In this document: positions 1,542 through 63,642 of the stretch, piece after piece
How the letters are laid out: each line of letters begins with the position of its first letter
How positions within the stretch are numbered: position 1 is the stretch's first letter
DNA from: Octopus bimaculoides
Lineage: Eukaryota
Direction: 5' to 3'
DNA: 64,000 nucleotides
Assembly: GCF_001194135.2 (NCBI RefSeq)
Contig: NC_068989.1
Span: 80,880,849-80,944,848 of the forward strand
The notes under the pieces: generated by a model
Databases searched by the model: none
Seen by the model: only the letters and a program-made list of their open reading frames with translations
Told to the model about the DNA's origin: nothing
Position numbers and translations under genes: made by a program

Positions 1542-2309
1542 NNNNNNNNNNNNNNNNNNNNNNNNNNNNNNNNNNNNNNNNNNNNNNNNNNNNNNNNNNN
1601 NNNNNNNNNNNNNNNNNNNNNNNNNNNNNNNNNNNNNNNNNNNNNNNNNNNNNNNNNNNNNNNNNNNNNNNNNNNNNNNNNNNNNNNNNNNNNNNNNNNN
1701 NNNNNNNNNNNNNNNNNNNNNNNNNNNNNNNNNNNNNNNNNNNNNNNNNNNNNNNNNNNNNNNNNNNNNNNNNNNNNNNNNNNNNNNNNNNNNNNNNNNN
1801 NNNNNNNNNNNNNNNNNNNNNNNNNNNNNNNNNNNNNNNNNNNNNNNNNNNNNNNNNNNNNNNNNNNNNNNNNNNNNNNNNNNNNNNNNNNNNNNNNNNN
1901 NNNNNNNNNNNNNNNNNNNNNNNNNNNNNNNNNNNNNNNNNNNNNNNNNNNNNNNNNNNNNNNNNNNNNNNNNNNNNNNNNNNNNNNNNNNNNNNNNNNN
2001 NNNNNNNNNNNNNNNNNNNNNNNNNNNNNNNNNNNNNNNNNNNNNNNNNNNNNNNNNNNNNNNNNNNNNNNNNNNNNNNNNNNNNNNNNNNNNNNNNNNN
2101 NNNNNNNNNNNNNNNNNNNNNNNNNNNNNNNNNNNNNNNNNNNNNNNNNNNNNNNNNNNNNNNNNNNNNNNNNNNNNNNNNNNNNNNNNNNNNNNNNNNN
2201 NNNNNNNNNNNNNNNNNNNNNNNNNNNNNNNNNNNNNNNNNNNNNNNNNNNNNNNNNNNNNNNNNNNNNNNNNNNNNNNNNNNNNNNNNNNNNNNNNNNN
2301 NNNNNNNNN

Positions 2310-10548: not shown

Positions 10549-11176
10549 NNNNNNNNNNNNNNNNNNNNNNNNNNNNNNNNNNNNNNNNNNNNNNNNNNNN
10601 NNNNNNNNNNNNNNNNNNNNNNNNNNNNNNNNNNNNNNNNNNNNNNNNNNNNNNNNNNNNNNNNNNNNNNNNNNNNNNNNNNNNNNNNNNNNNNNNNNNN
10701 NNNNNNNNNNNNNNNNNNNNNNNNNNNNNNNNNNNNNNNNNNNNNNNNNNNNNNNNNNNNNNNNNNNNNNNNNNNNNNNNNNNNNNNNNNNNNNNNNNNN
10801 NNNNNNNNNNNNNNNNNNNNNNNNNNNNNNNNNNNNNNNNNNNNNNNNNNNNNNNNNNNNNNNNNNNNNNNNNNNNNNNNNNNNNNNNNNNNNNNNNNNN
10901 NNNNNNNNNNNNNNNNNNNNNNNNNNNNNNNNNNNNNNNNNNNNNNNNNNNNNNNNNNNNNNNNNNNNNNNNNNNNNNNNNNNNNNNNNNNNNNNNNNNN
11001 NNNNNNNNNNNNNNNNNNNNNNNNNNNNNNNNNNNNNNNNNNNNNNNNNNNNNNNNNNNNNNNNNNNNNNNNNNNNNNNNNNNNNNNNNNNNNNNNNNNN
11101 NNNNNNNNNNNNNNNNNNNNNNNNNNNNNNNNNNNNNNNNNNNNNNNNNNNNNNNNNNNNNNNNNNNNNNNNNNNN

Positions 11177-12659: not shown

Positions 12660-12870
12660 TCTGGAGGAGTATGTAGAGGAGGTTTAAAGAAGGTAGAAGA
12701 GGAAGAGAAAGTAGAGGAGGAAGCGGAGAGGAGGAAGAAGAGAAAGTAGAGGAAAAGACAGAGGAAGAGGCGGAGAGAAGGAAGAGAAGGCAAAGGAGGA
12801 TGAGAAGATAGAGGAAGGGAGGAGGAAGAGAAGGCAGAGGAGGAAAAGAAAGTGGAGGAGGAGGAAATAT
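12660..12870. repeat. Purine-rich (GAG/GAA) low-complexity tract; similar tracts at ~48120-48500 and 61080-61190
   Basis: Almost only G and A on the plus strand. Confidence 0.9.
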
Positions 12871-13994: not shown

Positions 13995-14027
13995 CTTAGC
14001 CCTTTACGATGACGATTCCATCGATAG
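13995..14027 (-). CDS. 33-nt internal exon, probable exon 2 of gene A (S-YRWNRHRKGL-)
   Basis: Acceptor tactttgtttgtag| and donor AAG|GTAAGC. Only the phase-2 frame is open, which is the phase left by exon 18019-18644; the other two frames hit TAA. CpG-rich within an AT-rich intron. Confidence 0.55.
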
Positions 14028-15113
14028 CTACAAACAAAGTATTTTGTCAGGCACATGAAAAGCATCAATGATATAACGACTACATTTTCAATATAAAATA
14101 CCTTTGACTACATAACCCTTTGAATTCATAATTTAATTAGTCTTATTTCAAAAGCTCATATTTGTTAACCATTTTCAACAACCTTGAAATTTATTTAACC
14201 TAAGAAAACAATAAATATTTTGAGGATCAGTTGAAAAAAGATAGTGCTAACTGCCAGTCAATCATAAAGTCTAGGTGGACTTGCATTAGAGCTTTTGTTG
14301 TTTGTAACCAACTACCATCATTGTATTATAAAAACATCCTGCACAGTTTTATGGTTATGAAGTTTGCTTCACAACTACATGGTTTTGAAGTTCAGTCCCA
14401 CTGTGTAACACCTTTGGAAAGTGTCTTCTATTATATCTTGAACTAACTAATGACTTATGAGTGTGATAGCAAGACAAAAACTGCAAGGAAGCTCTGTGTG
14501 TGTGTGTGAGTATATATAACAAAGAATGAAGATGCATTATCAATAATTTATTTAGCTTACATATGTTTCAAACAGCTTAGCATAATGCAACCTTTTCACA
14601 TTGCAGTTTGCAGGTTTAGTCAGTCCTTCATTTGATCAATGAATTAGCTACAACTACAGAGCTACTAACTACTAAACTATTCTCCTCAAGGCTAACATAA
14701 TTTATACAAACACACACACACATGCATGCATGTGTGTGAGAGTGTATGTGTGAACATGAATGTCAATTCTATATGTTGTCATTATTACCATCTGAGCAAA
14801 AGGCAAAGGTATTTACTTTCTCCTTTCACAAACATTCCATTGTTCAATGGAGACAGGAAGACCAGGGGAATGCAAAAATTTCCTTACTTGAAAAACAAGT
14901 TAGAATCAGCAACAAAAGGAGCATCAGGTCATACAAAATCTCTTTCAACCACTTTTATGGGTGGGATTACAAAGTAGCTCTCTCTTTTGACTTGTTCAGC
15001 AACAATTCTCTACATAGCACAGAAATTATAGATAAAACGCTTTGCAGTATTTATTCAGAGTTCAAACCCTGCCAGAGTCAACTTTCATTCCTCCAGAGTT
15101 GAGGGGTTGCGCA

Positions 15114-15276
15114 GGTGCAGAAGTGGCTGTGCGGTAAGTAGTTGCTTACCAGCCACATGGTTCTGGGTTCATTCCCACTGCGTGGCATCTTGGGCAAGTG
15201 TCTTCTACTATAGCCTTGGGTCGACCAAAGCCTCGTGAGTGGATTTGGTAGACGGAAAACTGAAGGAAGCCCGTCG

Positions 15277-15357
<81 letters not shown>

Positions 15358-15540
15358 TTCTGTGTCTGTTCCCCCAGCATCGCTTGACAACCGATGCTGA
15401 TGTGTTTACGTCTCCGTAACTTAGCGGTTCGGCAAAAGAGACCAATAGAATAAGTCCTGGGGGTCGATTTGCTCGACTAAAGGTGGTGCTCCAGCATGGC
15501 CACAGTCAAATGACTGAAACAAGTGAAAGAGTAAAAGAGA
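15114..15540 (+). mobile_element. CORE-type SINE family C, full length
   Basis: Complete head, CORE block, long internal (TG)n, tail ending GAAAGAGTAAAAGAG. Confidence 0.9.
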
Positions 15541-17727: not shown

Positions 17728-18018
17728 ATGAAAGTTAGTCAAGTATATTTTATTTGACGATATACAAAAGTGCACTTTTTCTTCTTTTTTTTTTTTCAAA
17801 AATAAGGTCTCAAAAAAATACCACCCCAAGTTCTATATGCAAAGTTGCTTTAAACATTACATGTTTTAATGCAGTAAAAACTTCTTTTTCTGAATATGCA
17901 CTGCTGAAGTAAGGGTGCATCTTATATGCCTGCATGTCTTTTATGCTATCAGCTACTGTAGATAGATACAATAGTGCAGATCTAAACACAAATTACAAAA
18001 TAACAGAATGGTACTTAC

Positions 18019-18644
18019 GAGGCATTCTTGGACTCTTGGTGAAGACGGCTATATTTTACATTGGCAACTGGCTTTTCACCTTCCATACGTAACAAAGGTC
18101 CCATCTCTGCACCAAGACTTTTCTTGGCATTTTCAAGAGCCCCTTGACCCAATCGCTGTGCGACAGGAGGATTTGGAATATTTTCATTGTTGCCATAGTT
18201 GTGGAACAAAATATCCACAGTGCCATGGTTTCGGTCAGCATAATGTTGAGCATCTTCGCCTTTCAGCTTTGGTATGGGACGATCAATGATATCTAACTCT
18301 CCATATTTATCCATTAGGTTACGCATAGCTTCACCTTTGTTGCTTTCAGCTGTACGAAAACTTTCACTTTGATTAACTACTGGAGGCTGGTTTTCAGAAC
18401 TGCTCAATCCACCACCCATTACTTCAGCCATGCATCCTTTATTAAGGTCATAATTGCGTTTAGCTTCTGCTGTTCGGAGACGTACGCCACCTCTAGGAGA
18501 AGCATCACCATTCTGTGTGTTGCTGGTACCAAATAAATTTCCAGTTCCATCACGGACTCTTAAAGCGTATGCTTGGGCTTCAGCACTGCGACGAGGATGA
18601 TTTTTTGATTTCAGTTTATATTCAGTTCCATTCATTGCAGACAT
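18019..18644 (-). CDS. First coding exon of an uncharacterised protein with five ~37-aa tandem repeats (gene A)
   Basis: Longest non-repetitive ORF in the window (208 codons + 2 nt). It ends exactly at a consensus donor CCTC|GTAAGTAC (GT 18018-18017). Strong upstream acceptor tttgtttccatttccag| (exon start 18702, 58-nt 5'UTR with an in-frame TGA before the ATG). GC/CpG content is higher than the flanks, and the internal protein periodicity is not explained by DNA repeats. Confidence 0.85.
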
Positions 18645-18896
18645 GTTGCTTTGTGGTCATTCAAAATATATTTAACAGCAGTAGAAAATGGAGATCAAAA
18701 TTCTGGAAATGGAAACAAATAAAGAGATAATTAAAATGACATTTTGAAAGAAAAAAGAAAAAAAACTATAATAGACAATTTGGTGACAAAAGGATTAACA
18801 GCTTGGTTGCATGCTTCAGATCCGGTTCAAGCCCACAGTCTCTGATCAATGGCTTTGTGGATCAAATTTGAGAGAAACTATACAAAGCCTAGGCAT

Positions 18897-18928
<32 letters not shown>

Positions 18929-38823: not shown

Positions 38824-38917
38824 ACACACACACACACACATTTATATATATATATATATATACACACACNNNNNNNNNNNNNNNNNNNNNNNNNNNNNNN
38901 NNNNNNNNNNNNNNNNN

Positions 38918-43450: not shown

Positions 43451-44211
43451 ATAAAGAAAGGATTAAGTGAATATTAAANNNNNNNNNNNNNNNNNNNNNN
43501 NNNNNNNNNNNNNNNNNNNNNNNNNNNNNNNNNNNNNNNNNNNNNNNNNNNNNNNNNNNNNNNNNNNNNNNNNNNNNNNNNNNNNNNNNNNNNNNNNNNN
43601 NNNNNNNNNNNNNNNNNNNNNNNNNNNNNNNNNNNNNNNNNNNNNNNNNNNNNNNNNNNNNNNNNNNNNNNNNNNNNNNNNNNNNNNNNNNNNNNNNNNN
43701 NNNNNNNNNNNNNNNNNNNNNNNNNNNNNNNNNNNNNNNNNNNNNNNNNNNNNNNNNNNNNNNNNNNNNNNNNNNNNNNNNNNNNNNNNNNNNNNNNNNN
43801 NNNNNNNNNNNNNNNNNNNNNNNNNNNNNNNNNNNNNNNNNNNNNNNNNNNNNNNNNNNNNNNNNNNNNNNNNNNNNNNNNNNNNNNNNNNNNNNNNNNN
43901 NNNNNNNNNNNNNNNNNNNNNNNNNNNNNNNNNNNNNNNNNNNNNNNNNNNNNNNNNNNNNNNNNNNNNNNNNNNNNNNNNNNNNNNNNNNNNNNNNNNN
44001 NNNNNNNNNNNNNNNNNNNNNNNNNNNNNNNNNNNNNNNNNNNNNNNNNNNNNNNNNNNNNNNNNNNNNNNNNAGCTACGTGATAATGCATGACTAATTA
44101 AAAACTGTCTAAATAAATAAGTCTTTCCATTTGACAGAGTAACCAGAAAGCTAAAAGGTTAAAGTGATCTAAATTAAAACTTAATAAAATAGCTTTGCCA
44201 TTATTAAGATA

Positions 44212-50400: not shown

Positions 50401-50687
50401 CAGTGGTTCTCAACCATTTTTTTGCCTATGGACCCCTTTGTTTCCCATTTTACTTGGATGGAACTCCCAAACCATTCACTGCATATAAAAAAAAAATCTT
50501 GCCTTACTGCTTTTAATTAAATATTANNNNNNNNNNNNNNNNNNNNNNNNNNNNNNNNNNNNNNNNNNNNNNNNNNNNNNNNNNNNNNNNNNNNNNNNNN
50601 NNNNNNNNNNGTATTCTAAAATTATAACCGATTTATTGCACACAAATTTTAGCAAAATCTTATATAGACTCTAGTTGAGAACCATTG
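50401..50687. mobile_element. Same hAT MITE family, spanning a gap
   Basis: CAGTGGTTCTCAACCATTTT ... GTTGAGAACCATTG; TSD degraded. A left end only is seen at 48735, and a right end only of a related hAT at ~33592-33611. Confidence 0.7.
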
Positions 50688-54450: not shown

Positions 54451-55943
54451 CATTTCATTGAATTCTTTGTTATTTTCAAAATGAACGAAAACAAAGGTAG
54501 GATATATCAACAGAAATATGGCAATCAGAGACAGACATCATTGCCCAGGGTGTCTTCTTTGGTATTCTATCTTTTGTGGGTTTCAGTCACTGGACTGTGG
54601 CCTTGCTGGGGCATCACATTTCTGATTTTTTTTTTTTTTTTTTAAATCAAACAAATCAACTCTAGTGCTTATTTTTTTAAGTGTAGCACTTATTCTATTG
54701 GTCTAGTTTGGCGAAGCACTAAGTTATGAAAATATAAACAAACTAACACTGGTTAGCAAGCAGTTGGGGGGGAGGACAAACACACACAACAGGCTTCCAC
54801 AGTTTCTGTCTACCAAATTTACAAGGCATTGGTCAGCCTGGGGCAACAGAAAAAGATACTTGCTCAAGGTACTGAACCCAAGACCAAGTAATTGCAAAAC
54901 AAGCTTCTTAAACACATACCCAATATTATCATTATTATTTTTTTTTTTTTTTTTTTAAGTTCATGCAGTTTGATAGGAGGGTAAAAAAATGATATCTTTA
55001 AGAGAGCAAGAAATATATATTTCTCCCATATTTTGTCATGCAGTGTGTGTGTGTGTGTGTGTTTAAGTATTATTTTTCATTTTTTAGTAAATTCAAAATA
55101 ATAAATATGCTCAAAATGTACACCCACTCCACTTCAAGTCAAGTCCTCTTCAACAAGAAGAACATGACAGCCATTGACCNNNNNNNNNNNNNNNNNNNNN
55201 NNNNNNNNNNNNNNNNNNNNNNNNNNNNNNNNNNNNNNNNNNNNNNNNNNNNNNNNNNNNNNNNNNNNNNNNNNNNNNNNNNNNNNNNNNNNNNNNNNNN
55301 NNNNNNNNNNNNNNNNNNNNNNNNNNNNNNNNNNNNNNNNNNNNNNNNNNNNNNNNNNNNNNNNNNNNNNNNNNNNNNNNNNNNNNNNNNNNNNNNNNNN
55401 NNNNNNNNNNNNNNNNNNNNNNNNNNNNNNNNNNNNNNNNNNNNNNNNNNNNNNNNNNNNNNNNNNNNNNNNNNNNNNNNNNNNNNNNNNNNNNNNNNNN
55501 NNNNNNNNNNNNNNNNNNNNNNNNNNNNNNNNNNNNNNNNNNNNNNNNNNNNNNNNNNNNNNNNNNNNNNNNNNNNNNNNNNNNNNNNNNNNNNNNNNNN
55601 NNNNNNNNNNNNNNNNNNNNNNNNNNNNNNNNNNNNNNNNNNNNNNNNNNNNNNNNNNNNNNNNNNNNNNNNNNNNNNNNNNNNNNNNNNNNNNNNNNNN
55701 NNNNNNNNNNNNNNNNNNNNNNNNNNNNNNNNTTTTTCACTCGCATTGTTTTGAATTAATCATGCATTATCTCATAGCTTTGAGGTTTCAATGATGTGAT
55801 TGTTTATTTTTAGAATGTCAGTGTAGGTTAGGTGTGAGAGGTTAGATATCGCCAGTTTAAATATAAAACATGTAGAATATTTGGGCCAGATATGGCCAGT
55901 TTAAACACTAAAGGGTTAAATTATACATACACACACACACATA

Positions 55944-61882: not shown

Positions 61883-63642
61883 NNNNNNNNNNNNNNNNNN
61901 NNNNNNNNNNNNNNNNNNNNNNNNNNNNNNNNNNNNNNNNNNNNNNNNNNNNNNNNNNNNNNNNNNNNNNNNNNNNNNNNNNNNNNNNNNNNNNNNNNNN
62001 NNNNNNNNNNNNNNNNNNNNNNNNNNNNNNNNNNNNNNNNNNNNNNNNNNNNNNNNNNNNNNNNNNNNNNNNNNNNNNNNNNNNNNNNNNNNNNNNNNNN
62101 NATACATATACATATATATATATATACATATATAGATAGAGAGATAGATACACACAGCAGAGAAACTGAGAAAACCAGCCCTACGCTCCTTACAGAATAA
62201 TGTAGACTAACCATAGTCCATAATACAATTATCATCATCATTTATATGTATGCTTTTACCATGCTGGTACAAGTTGGCTGAGACTTCTTCAGGTAATATT
62301 CTAAAGCTAGATATCCTTCTTGGTGCCAACTCTTACATGTATTCAGCAACGTACTTTATTTCCCTGACCTTTGCAGTGGATCACTAAGTTGTGGGACAAA
62401 CATAACTACTGTCCATTTAGAATCAATGAAAAGACATGAGCTCACACATAATAGGCTTCAATACAGTTTCTTATTTCTTTACTGCCTGCAAGGGACTACA
62501 CAGAGAGGGGACAAACAAGGCAGACAAATGGATTAAGTCAATTATATCGACCCCAGTGTGTAACTGGTACTTATTTAATCGACCCCAAAAGGATGACAGG
62601 CAAAATTGACCTTGGCGGATTTTGAATTCAGAACATAACGGCAGATGAAATACCGCTAAGCATTTCGCTTGGCGTGCTAACGTTTCTGCTAGCTCGCCAC
62701 TTCAATAGTTTCTATATACTGATATTCAGTCACAAGGTATTGGTCAACCAGAAGTCATTATAGAGCACATTTGCTCAAGGTGCCAGAGTGAGATTGAACC
62801 TAACACTGTGTGGTTGGACAGCAAACTTCTTAATCACATAACAACACACACCATATATATATATATATATANNNNNNNNNNNNNNNNNNNNNNNNNNNNN
62901 NNNNNNNNNNNNNNNNNNNNNNNNNNNNNNNNNNNNNNNNNNNNNNNNNNNNNNNNNNNNNNNNNNNNNNNNNNNNNNNNNNNNNNNNNNNNNNNNNNNN
63001 NNNNNNNNNNNNNNNNNNNNNNNNNNNNNNNNNNNNNNNNNNNNNNNNNNNNNNNNNNNNNNNNNNNNNNNNNNNNNNNNNNNNNNNNNNNNNNNNNNNN
63101 NNNNNNNNNNNNNNNNNNNNNNNNNNNNNNNNNNNNNNNNNNNNNNNNNNNNNNNNNNNNNNNNNNNNNNNNNNNNNNNNNNNNNNNNNNNNNNNNNNNN
63201 NNNNNNNNNNNNNNNNNNNNNNNNNNNNNNNNNNNNNNNNNNNNNNNNNNNNNNNNNACACACACACGACAAACACATATACATATATATATATACATAC
63301 ACACACACACACACACACACCCTAAATATGCATACACATACAGAGAGAGAACGTTATCATGTAGCCTCAGTTAGTTCAGACTGAGTGGAGTCTTGGTATG
63401 CTGATAGCATGCCAAACAACTGGGCGTAATCCGAAGATCTACCTACTGTCCCAGATGATAGCCAACAAGGTAAATACACACATCTTTGGTTGGGGAATTC
63501 AGAAGCCATTATTTCCCATTCAATTTCTTTCACACTTGACTAATTTTTATTTACTTGATGCACACTTTAGAAGTGAACAATAACTGCATTTAGACTGAAG
63601 TCCTTTGTGGGGACCATGTGTTTTTCCTCCCTGTGTGTGTCT

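What the first reader, a model, noticed from the sequence alone, without database searches (positions are those of the whole stretch)
18019..18644. Unannotated protein built from five ~37-aa helix-Gly-helix repeats
Seen: the translation aligns to itself as PRR-SAEAQAYALRVRDG-TGNLFG / VRLRTAEAKRNYDLNKG-CMAEVMG / PVVNQSESFRTAESNKGEAMRNLMDKYG / PKLKGEDAQHYADRNHG-TVDILFHNYG / QRLGQGALENAKKSLGAEMGPLLRMEG. A Gly recurs at residues 33, 70, 104, 141 and 178 (spacing 37, 34, 37, 37), with a small residue 9-10 positions before it and hydrophobic residues after it. The DNA is not tandemly repeated, so the periodicity is old and kept at protein level. Inference: short motifs in Pro/Gly/Asn-rich linkers at this spacing resemble filamentous microtubule-lattice binders such as SAXO/MAP6 Mn-motif arrays and ciliary or sperm microtubule inner proteins. 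From memory, repeat 5 resembles a segment of the ENKD1 N-terminus (unverified). I do not recognise the repeat as a named domain.
Basis: partly seen in the sequence, partly recalled or inferred. Interest (0 to 1): 0.7.

Follow-up and report, generated by a model that had tools for sequence, protein, structure and literature searches.

The report
Spiralian repeat protein sharing ENKD1's motif
This octopus exon encodes five of the seven copies of a 36-residue motif in a conserved but unnamed protein found across molluscs, annelids and flatworms, and the motif also occurs once in the microtubule-binding part of the vertebrate cilium protein ENKD1, so it is a candidate new microtubule-binding module.

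Summary
Window 18644→18019 (minus strand) is coding exon 1 of Octopus bimaculoides LOC106867264, a 347-aa "uncharacterized protein". NCBI has a gene model for it, but it has no name and no Pfam domain. The exon encodes 5 of 7 units of about 36 aa. The family consensus is sxRPxPRVKPEAxxxAxKNKGxMxxLLxxYG.

In the octopus exon alone the self-similarity is marginal (z=2.2). In the gastropod orthologue it is overwhelming (z=21). Profiles built from other unit positions recover octopus units 1, 3, 4, 6 and 7.

The gene is expressed, spliced and under strong purifying selection (dN/dS 0.06 in the closest pair). It belongs to a family of 125 representative clusters. Every named member is spiralian and none is characterised.

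It is not a SAXO/MAP6, tau or nebulin-type protein, and it matches no solved axonemal inner protein. The unit does match one conserved segment of ENKD1 (human residues 53-82) inside ENKD1's microtubule-binding N-terminus (hhalign 87%, P=4e-6; 0 of 1200 shuffles reach the real scores). The family lacks the enkurin domain, so it is not ENKD1.

Microtubule-lattice binding is the best hypothesis, but it is inferred and not shown.

The parts
18019..18644 (-). Coding exon 1 of LOC106867264. ATG at 18644, 626 nt, phase 2. Encodes residues 1-208 and two bases of codon 209.
   Evidence: 100% identical to P0001 residues 1-209. The Argonauta orthologue has its exon boundary at the same codon with a GT donor. 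pN 0.15-0.22 against saturated pS.
18013..18018 (-). 5' splice donor GTAAGT of intron 1
   Evidence: Read directly from the sequence. In the Sepia mRNA contigs the exon 1 and exon 3 coding sequences are joined.
18528..18605 (-). Repeat unit 1 (aa 14-39, NHPRRSAEAQAYALRVRDGTGNLFG). It is degenerate in cephalopods.
   Evidence: Leave-one-out profile 8.2 bits, 0/2000 shuffles.
18411..18500 (-). Repeat unit 2 (aa 49-78, SPRGGVRLRTAEAKRNYDLNKGCMAEVMGG)
   Evidence: 15.7 bits with the all-position unit HMM, but not significant in the leave-one-out test. Assigned as a unit by orthology with gastropod unit 2.
18297..18389 (-). Repeat unit 3 (aa 86-116, ...SESFRTAESNKGEAMRNLMDKYGE)
   Evidence: Leave-one-out 16.4 bits, 0/2000.
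18189..18284 (-). Repeat unit 4 (aa 121-152, DRPIPKLKGEDAQHYADRNHGTVDILFHNYGN). This is the best-preserved unit in the window.
   Evidence: 27.5 bits. Leave-one-out 20.1 bits, 0/2000. It is the octopus unit that hhalign pairs with ENKD1 residues 53-83.
18075..18173 (-). Repeat unit 5 (aa 158-190, NPPVAQRLGQGALENAKKSLGAEMGPLLRMEGE). The segment M181, G182, L184-E190 is invariant across molluscs.
   Evidence: 22.5 bits. Leave-one-out 4.8 bits, 6/2000. Invariant columns M181, G182 and L184-E190.
13995..14027 (-). 33-nt alternative micro-exon (…YRWNRHRKGL…). It is present in isoform X1 only and is flanked by an AG acceptor (14028-14029) and a GTAAG donor (from 13994).
   Evidence: Six-frame match to P0001 residues 209-219. 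Absent from all other orthologues.

Best explanation
**Shown.**
- The stretch is coding exon 1 of a real, expressed, selectively constrained octopus gene (LOC106867264).
- Its product is a hydrophilic, largely disordered protein. It consists of seven tandem ~36-residue units: five in this exon and one in each of two downstream exons.
- Each unit has a Pro-rich basic lead-in (RPxPRVKP), an Ala/Glu-rich helix (EAxxxAxKN), a nearly invariant Gly, and a short hydrophobic segment (xMxxLLxxYG).
- The protein belongs to an unnamed family present across Spiralia (cephalopods, gastropods, bivalves, annelids, flatworms), with 5-12 units per protein.
- The unit is significantly similar to a single conserved segment (human residues ~53-82) in the microtubule-binding N-terminal part of ENKD1. 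The family lacks ENKD1's enkurin domain.

**Inferred.**
- Each unit is a docking module for one repeat of the microtubule lattice.
- The array lies along or across protofilaments and stabilises them, either as a luminal inner protein or as a lattice-bound MAP. This is analogous to ENKD1, which sits in the B-tubule lumen of the transition-zone doublet with an 8-nm repeat.
- The disordered linkers set the register between units.

Confidence in the annotation and family assignment is about 0.95. Confidence in the microtubule-binding mechanism is about 0.45.
For: **Gene and exon.**

**Expression and splicing.** Complete intronless CDS in ~1.4-kb RNA-seq contigs from 8 runs. One run is from whole Sepia esculenta hatchlings.

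**Purifying selection.** pN 0.15-0.22 against pS 0.8-0.9. dN/dS is 0.056 for the closest pair.

**Repeat reality.**: 639 units in 137 proteins, median spacing 36 aa.

**Family size and taxa.** 125 representative clusters at E<=1e-3 and 80 at E<=1e-10. All named members are spiralian and uncharacterised.

**Disorder with one helix per unit.**. GRAVY is -1.1.

**ENKD1 link.**
- hhalign 86.9%, P=4.2e-6, and P=4.5e-4 with the five-unit profile.
- The unit HMM hits 73% of 120 ENKD1 proteins at >=10 bits at one fixed position, against 0 of 1200 shuffles.
- The reciprocal ENKD1-motif HMM hits 62% of the family at >=10 bits, against 0 of 690 shuffles.
- ENKD1 fragments 1-150 and 1-250 co-pellet with microtubules, bundle them and stabilise them. 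Fragment 250-346 does not (bioRxiv 10.1101/2021.07.20.453048).
- ENKD1 is a microtubule inner protein with 8-nm periodicity (bioRxiv 10.64898/2026.06.11.731632; PDB 11yj).
Against: - No experiment or expression pattern ties any family member to microtubules or cilia.
- ENKD1's microtubule binding is mapped only to residues 1-150 and 1-250, not to the 30-residue motif. In ENKD1 the motif could instead contact CEP41 or another partner.
- The octopus protein itself matches the ENKD1 motif only weakly (2.4 bits, 28/2000 shuffles). Within the window only unit 4 shows any signal (1.5 bits, 8/1000).
- The gastropod orthologues are near-neutral or acidic (pI 6.1-6.4), unlike classical basic surface MAPs.
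- The family is confined to Spiralia although tubulin is universal.
- No other solved axonemal inner protein carries the motif.
- The structure model is low confidence (pLDDT 47).
Confidence: 0.45

Rival explanations
1. The unit is a linear docking motif for a non-tubulin partner. An example would be the spiralian counterpart of a protein that ENKD1's N-terminus binds, such as CEP41 in the transition-zone doublet. On this view the array is a multivalent scaffold or sponge for that partner and does not bind the lattice.
For: - The motif has sharply conserved positions (R 85%, E 75%, A/G 97%, G 93%), typical of a specific protein-protein interface.
- ENKD1 forms its 8-nm repeat together with CEP41.
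- ENKD1's microtubule binding has not been mapped to the motif itself.
- The gastropod orthologues are not basic.
Against: - No partner is known.
- The regular ~36-aa spacing across 639 units fits a periodic polymer better than independent globular partners.
- The ENKD1 fragment that holds the motif does bind microtubules.
Confidence: 0.25
2. It is a nebulin-like actin-filament ruler or stabiliser, with one ~35-36-residue helical unit per actin subunit (5.5 nm).
For: - The unit period of 36 aa is nearly the nebulin period of 35 aa (established knowledge).
- There is one predicted helix per unit, and a helix start of the Pro-Glu type.
Against: - There is no SDxxYK signature in the column composition.
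- No nebulin, LASP or nebulette-like protein is among the 125 family hits. All are <=507 aa with no LIM or SH3 annotation.
- The only significant outside match is ENKD1, a microtubule protein.
Confidence: 0.08
3. It is a generic hydrophilic disordered protein (a hydrophilin or stress protectant, or a phase-separating protein) whose repeats have no specific binding register.
For: - Very hydrophilic (GRAVY -1.1).
- Mostly disordered in the model.
- Rich in N, G, E, R and S.
- Recovered from a stress-exposure transcriptome, although that study says nothing about this gene.
Against: - Position-specific conservation over the whole of Spiralia includes an invariant MG.LLRMEGE block across molluscs.
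- dN/dS is 0.056.
- These constraints are much tighter than composition-driven function requires.
Confidence: 0.07
4. It is a divergent SAXO/MAP6 (Mn-motif) protein, as the first reader suggested by analogy.
For: It has tandem short motifs in Pro-rich linkers, which is the general architecture of SAXO proteins.
Against: - The SAXO N-terminal cysteine motif is absent. The octopus protein has no Cys in its first 40 residues, and 98 of 136 family members also have none.
- No column pair shows the conserved T/S and F/Y six positions apart that defines Mn-like motifs.
- No PDB chain of that kind is matched by the full-length or unit profiles.
Confidence: 0.03

Closest known systems
ENKD1 (enkurin domain-containing protein 1), N-terminal microtubule-binding region
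   Same: - It shares the ~30-residue motif P-x-P-R-[IV]-[RK]-P-x-[AG]-x-x-x-[LA]-E-x-G-x-x-G-x-x-x-x-L-L (ENKD1 residues ~52-87). Support comes from hhalign at 86.9% and reciprocal HMM scans with shuffle controls.
- The motif sits in a low-complexity N-terminal region.
- That ENKD1 region binds and stabilises microtubules.
   Different: - ENKD1 has one clear copy of the motif. This family has 5-12 tandem copies.
- The family has no enkurin domain (PF13864) and no match to ENKD1 beyond profile positions 22-114.
- ENKD1 is widespread in animals, whereas this family is seen only in Spiralia.
- The octopus copies are degenerate relative to the family consensus.
SAXO / MAP6 Mn-motif proteins
   Same: They are arrays of short motifs separated by Pro-rich linkers. 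They are proposed lattice or lumen binders that need several motifs to bind.
   Different: There is no N-terminal Cys motif, no T/S(6)...F/Y(12) signature and no detectable sequence similarity.
Nebulin / nebulette / LASP 35-residue repeats
   Same: The period is almost identical (36 against 35 residues), with one helix per unit, which suggests a one-unit-per-subunit ruler logic.
   Different: There is no SDxxYK motif, no sequence similarity and no LIM or SH3 domains. The polymer is actin, whereas the only outside match here is to a microtubule protein.
Tau/MAP2/MAP4 microtubule-binding repeats
   Same: They are tandem ~31-32-residue repeats in a disordered protein that order on the lattice.
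   Different: Here each unit is predicted to be helical and not extended.

Membership tests
Unnamed spiralian 36-aa repeat family (orthologues of LOC106867264) | Full-length orthology to other mollusc members, including the invariant MG.LLRMEGE block and the C-terminal SE[EDLN]W | tested here: met
   E-values of 1e-31 to 1e-86 to Argonauta, Sepia and gastropod proteins. 52 invariant columns in exon 1.
Unnamed spiralian 36-aa repeat family (orthologues of LOC106867264) | Tandem units matching the consensus RPxPRVKPEAxxxAxKNKGxMxxLLxxYG at ~36-aa spacing | tested here: met
   7 units in the octopus protein, starting at aa 14, 51, 86, 122, 160, 225 and 297. The leave-one-out test is significant for 5 units and marginal for 1.
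ENKD1 | C-terminal enkurin domain (Pfam PF13864) | tested here: not met
   Pfam is '-' for all family members, while all ENKD1 hits carry PF13864. The ENKD1 profile hits family proteins only through positions 22-114.
ENKD1 | Conserved N-terminal motif PRI(R/K)P...LExGxxGxxxxLLQLEG (human residues 52-87) | tested here: met
   Met at family level. For the octopus protein alone it is weak: 2.4 bits overall (p~0.014), with unit 6 at 7.7 bits and 0/1000.
ENKD1 | Binds and stabilises microtubules; localises to the centriole, cilium or doublet lumen | not testable with these tools
   Needs biochemistry or localisation. Only the ENKD1 literature is available.
SAXO / MAP6 | N-terminal cysteine-cluster motif (motif 1 of Dacheux et al. 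2012) | tested here: not met
   The octopus N-terminus has no Cys in its first 40 aa. 98 of 136 family members have none and the overall Cys content is 0.9%. The definition comes from PMC3280300.
SAXO / MAP6 | Repeated Mn-like motif with conserved T/S at position 6 and F/Y at position 12 | tested here: not met
   Column composition of 149 units: T+S reaches at most 47% (position 23), and six positions later there is no aromatic column. The only Tyr-rich column (37%) is 8 positions away.
Nebulin repeat | ~35-aa unit carrying the conserved SDxxYK motif | tested here: not met
   The period is similar (36 aa), but there is no S-D-x-x-Y-K in the column composition.
Tau/MAP2/MAP4 repeat | 31-32-aa unit ending in PGGG with KxGS | tested here: not met
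   No PGGG or KxGS in the protein (sequence).
Axonemal microtubule inner proteins with solved structures | Sequence similarity to any chain of the doublet-microtubule cryo-EM entries | tested here: inconclusive
   Only ENKD1 (11yj) is matched, and only by the hybrid profile. The unit profile alone missed ENKD1, so single-copy carriers scoring under ~14 bits would be missed.

The most novel reading that the evidence does not exclude
The 36-residue unit is a previously unrecognised tubulin-lattice-binding module. Vertebrate ENKD1 keeps one copy and uses it to bind the doublet lumen. Spiralians amplified it into 5-12-copy proteins, which form a lineage-specific class of microtubule inner or lattice proteins that staple successive lattice repeats. 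Defining the motif would also explain how ENKD1's N-terminus binds microtubules.
Probability: 0.35. Interest if true: 0.7.

Novelty: new variant of a known kind. Interest (0 to 1): 0.55.

Why it matters
If the unit is a lattice-binding module, three things follow.

- It adds a new motif class to the short list of tandem microtubule-binding repeats (tau, Mn, and others).
- It gives a residue-level hypothesis for how ENKD1, a centriole, cilium and transition-zone inner protein, binds microtubules.
- It identifies a conserved, abundant and completely uncharacterised protein family in molluscs, annelids and flatworms, including parasitic trematodes.

The immediate result is more modest. A gene labelled 'uncharacterized' now has a defined repeat architecture, a family, a taxonomic range, evidence of constraint and one testable functional lead.

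Tried and rejected
- **PDB sequence searches.** The single protein, the full-length profile and the unit profile found nothing meaningful. The unit search lacked power for single-copy motifs: it missed ENKD1, which is in the PDB.
- **Hybrid profile (units plus ENKD1) against the PDB.** It found only ENKD1.
- **Second large search with the five-unit profile.** It returned only 10 mollusc proteins and no names.
- **Literature searches.** Gene and protein accessions found nothing. The SRA run search placed only one run, in whole Sepia esculenta hatchlings, which does not discriminate between tissues.
- **AlphaFold2.** The model was low confidence (pLDDT 47), so no fold search was run because its matches would be meaningless.
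- **dS estimates.** dS between octopus and the other cephalopods is saturated, so only pN/pS and one close pair give a usable ratio.
- **SAXO/MAP6, nebulin, tau and JPT1.** All were considered and rejected on their defining motifs. The last three used sequences typed from my memory and count as weak tests only.
- **ENKD1 papers.** They gave no finer mapping of residues 53-82.
Tested and not supported.

Full report
**What is at the coordinates.** The window is eukaryotic (about 36% GC, microsatellites, assembly gaps). On the minus strand an ORF runs from the ATG at 18644 to a stop at 18015. A consensus GTAAGT donor begins at 18018, so the coding exon is 18644→18019 (626 nt, phase 2). Its translation is 100% identical to residues 1-209 of Octopus bimaculoides 'uncharacterized protein LOC106867264 isoform X1', 347 aa. 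The gene therefore has a model at NCBI, but it has no name and no Pfam domain.

The gene spans 28.3 kb. A 33-nt alternative micro-exon lies at 14027→13995, flanked by AG and GTAAG, and is specific to isoform X1. The two remaining coding exons lie beyond the start of the window.

There is no tandem DNA repeat in the exon.

- In the octopus exon alone the self-similarity is marginal: best off-diagonal local alignment z=2.2, with 5 of 100 shuffles as good.
- In the Gigantopelta orthologue it is overwhelming, at z=21.
- A unit HMM made only from two gastropod proteins finds seven units in the octopus protein, five in this exon and one in each downstream exon. One thousand shuffles reach at most 5 bits per domain.
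- Unit i of gastropods is orthologous to unit i of octopus, so I repeated the test leaving out the same-position units. Octopus units 1, 3, 4, 6 and 7 were still recovered (0/2000 shuffles). Unit 5 was recovered weakly (6/2000) and unit 2 was not.
- Iterated over the family, the HMM marks 639 units in 137 proteins with a median spacing of 36 residues.
- Column composition over 149 non-redundant units gives R 85%, V/L/I 82%, E 75%, A/G 97%, G 93% and M/V/L 84%.

**Is it a functional gene?** RNA-seq-derived contigs of ~1.4 kb from eight independent runs carry the complete 357-364-aa CDS of two decapodiform orthologues, without introns and with UTRs. One run is from whole Sepia esculenta hatchlings. 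Argonauta has its exon-1 boundary at the same codon with a GT donor. Between octopus and the other cephalopods synonymous sites are saturated (pS 0.8-0.9) while pN is 0.15-0.22. The closest pair gives dN/dS = 0.056.

**The family.** An exhaustive HMMER profile search of 1.84 billion representative proteins found 125 clusters at E<=1e-3 and 80 at E<=1e-10. Every member that carries a name is spiralian and 'uncharacterized' or 'hypothetical':

- Cephalopods: Octopus, Argonauta, Sepia.
- Gastropods: Gigantopelta, Nucella, Arion, Biomphalaria, Pomacea, Patella.
- Bivalves: Saccostrea, Ruditapes.
- Annelid: Capitella.
- Flatworms: Macrostomum, Calicophoron, Echinostoma.

Annelid members are ~480-500 aa with more units, including a subtype ending in …WF.H. 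Repeat number changes by unit duplication: the Argonauta paralogue P0005 has units 3-4 duplicated, and gastropod P0010 has nine units.

The octopus protein is very hydrophilic (GRAVY -1.1) and basic (pI 9.5), but the gastropod orthologues have pI 6.1-6.4. AlphaFold2 with the family alignment gives a low-confidence model (mean pLDDT 47). It shows one helix per unit and disordered linkers, and the helix breaks at the Gly in units 4, 5 and 7 only. 'Helix-Gly-helix' is therefore plausible but not established.

**Comparison with known families.**

- Single-sequence, full-length-profile and unit-profile searches of all PDB chain sequences, which include the axonemal doublet entries, gave only chance matches.
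- SAXO proteins are defined by an N-terminal cysteine motif and by Mn-like repeats with conserved T/S at position 6 and F/Y at position 12 (PMC3280300). Neither feature is present here.
- Nebulin's SDxxYK and tau's PGGG are absent. Sequences of nebulette, the tau repeat region and JPT1 typed from my memory give no score. This is a weak test.

**ENKD1.**

- Profile-profile comparison aligns one repeat unit to ENKD1 residues ~53-83. P is 4.5e-4 with the five-unit profile. Probability is 86.9% and P is 4.2e-6 with the pure unit profile.
- The unit HMM, which contains no ENKD1 sequence, scores 120 ENKD1 proteins at a median of 14.8 bits, with 73% at >=10 bits. Almost all hits start at residues 50-79. 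In 1200 shuffled ENKD1 sequences the maximum is 8.0 bits.
- In the other direction, an HMM of the ENKD1 segment alone scores 62% of family proteins at >=10 bits (maximum 49.8), against 0 of 690 shuffles.
- The full ENKD1 profile touches family proteins only through positions 22-114, never through the enkurin domain.
- An example is Podarcis ENKD1 55-80, PPPRIKPNAKDILEMGKKGTVGALLQ, against the family consensus PAPRVKPEAEENAEKNKGTMGDLM.

The ENKD1 sequences are related to one another, so these counts are not independent trials. The fixed position, the reciprocal result and the hhalign statistic still agree.

The link is weak for the octopus protein itself (2.4 bits, 28/2000 shuffles). Its best unit is unit 6, outside the window (7.7 bits, 0/1000). 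A hybrid profile of family units plus ENKD1 finds only ENKD1 in the PDB (11yj, residues 52-87).

**What this suggests about function.** ENKD1 fragments 1-150 and 1-250 co-pellet with microtubules, bundle them and stabilise them. Fragment 250-346, the enkurin domain, does not. ENKD1 has been assigned as an inner protein of the B-tubule lumen of the transition-zone doublet, repeating every 8 nm together with CEP41 (PDB 11yj). The shared motif lies inside the microtubule-binding fragment.

The best-supported hypothesis is that each unit docks on one lattice repeat and that the array stabilises microtubules. This step is an inference.

- The motif itself has not been mapped as the binding element.
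- It could instead bind CEP41 or another partner.
- The gastropod proteins are not basic.
- There are no localisation or expression data.

I give the mechanism about 0.45. The rivals are a non-tubulin docking scaffold (0.25), a nebulin-like actin ruler (0.08), a generic hydrophilin (0.07) and a SAXO/MAP6 relative (0.03).

**Verdict.** SAXO/MAP6 membership and the 'repeat 5' detail are not supported. The protein is a member of an undescribed spiralian repeat family that multiplies a motif present once in ENKD1. I rate it as a new variant of a known kind, of moderate interest, with a clear first test: inspect ENKD1 residues 52-87 in 11yj and run microtubule-binding assays.

Noticed in passing
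window 5674, 5978, 9232, 15153, 22231, 31837, 33194, 37490, 38768, 49247, 57002: At least 11 copies of a SINE-like interspersed element share the core AGTGGGACTGAACCTGGAACCATGTGG with <=4 mismatches. The copy at 15153 lies in intron 1 of LOC106867264. The element explains the recurring 'SGTEPxTMW' peptide in unrelated long ORFs.
   Followed up: partly
window 1542-2309, 10549-11176, 38870-38917, 43479-44073, 50527-50610, 55180-55732, 61883-62101, 62872-63257: Eight assembly gaps (runs of N), mostly bordered by microsatellites. They create the long spurious 'X' ORFs in the ORF list.
   Followed up: yes
window 13995-14027 (-): A 33-nt alternative micro-exon inserts YRWNRHRKGL between units 5 and 6 in isoform X1 only. 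It is absent from all orthologues examined, and whether it is really used is unknown.
   Followed up: partly
window 18896-18928; 12688-12862; 15283-15369: A (TG)n microsatellite lies ~250 nt upstream of the start codon. A purine-rich 18/35/44-nt array and a (TGTG)n tract lie in intron 1.
   Followed up: no
P0001 C-terminus (exon beyond the window; L001 38148-38321): Mollusc orthologues end in a conserved [RK]-S-E-[EDLN]-W-COOH. This resembles the acidic-aromatic EEY/F tails recognised by CAP-Gly domains. It is not conserved in the annelid and flatworm members. Untested.
   Followed up: no
P0005 (Argonauta, second locus) and P0010 (gastropod): The Argonauta paralogue has units 3-4 duplicated, and one gastropod member has nine units. 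Repeat number therefore evolves by unit duplication within the family.
   Followed up: partly
P0018 (labelled Siedleckia nematoides in EukProt): A family member attributed to an apicomplexan transcriptome closely resembles the annelid proteins. It probably reflects contamination from the polychaete host and not a protist homologue.
   Followed up: no
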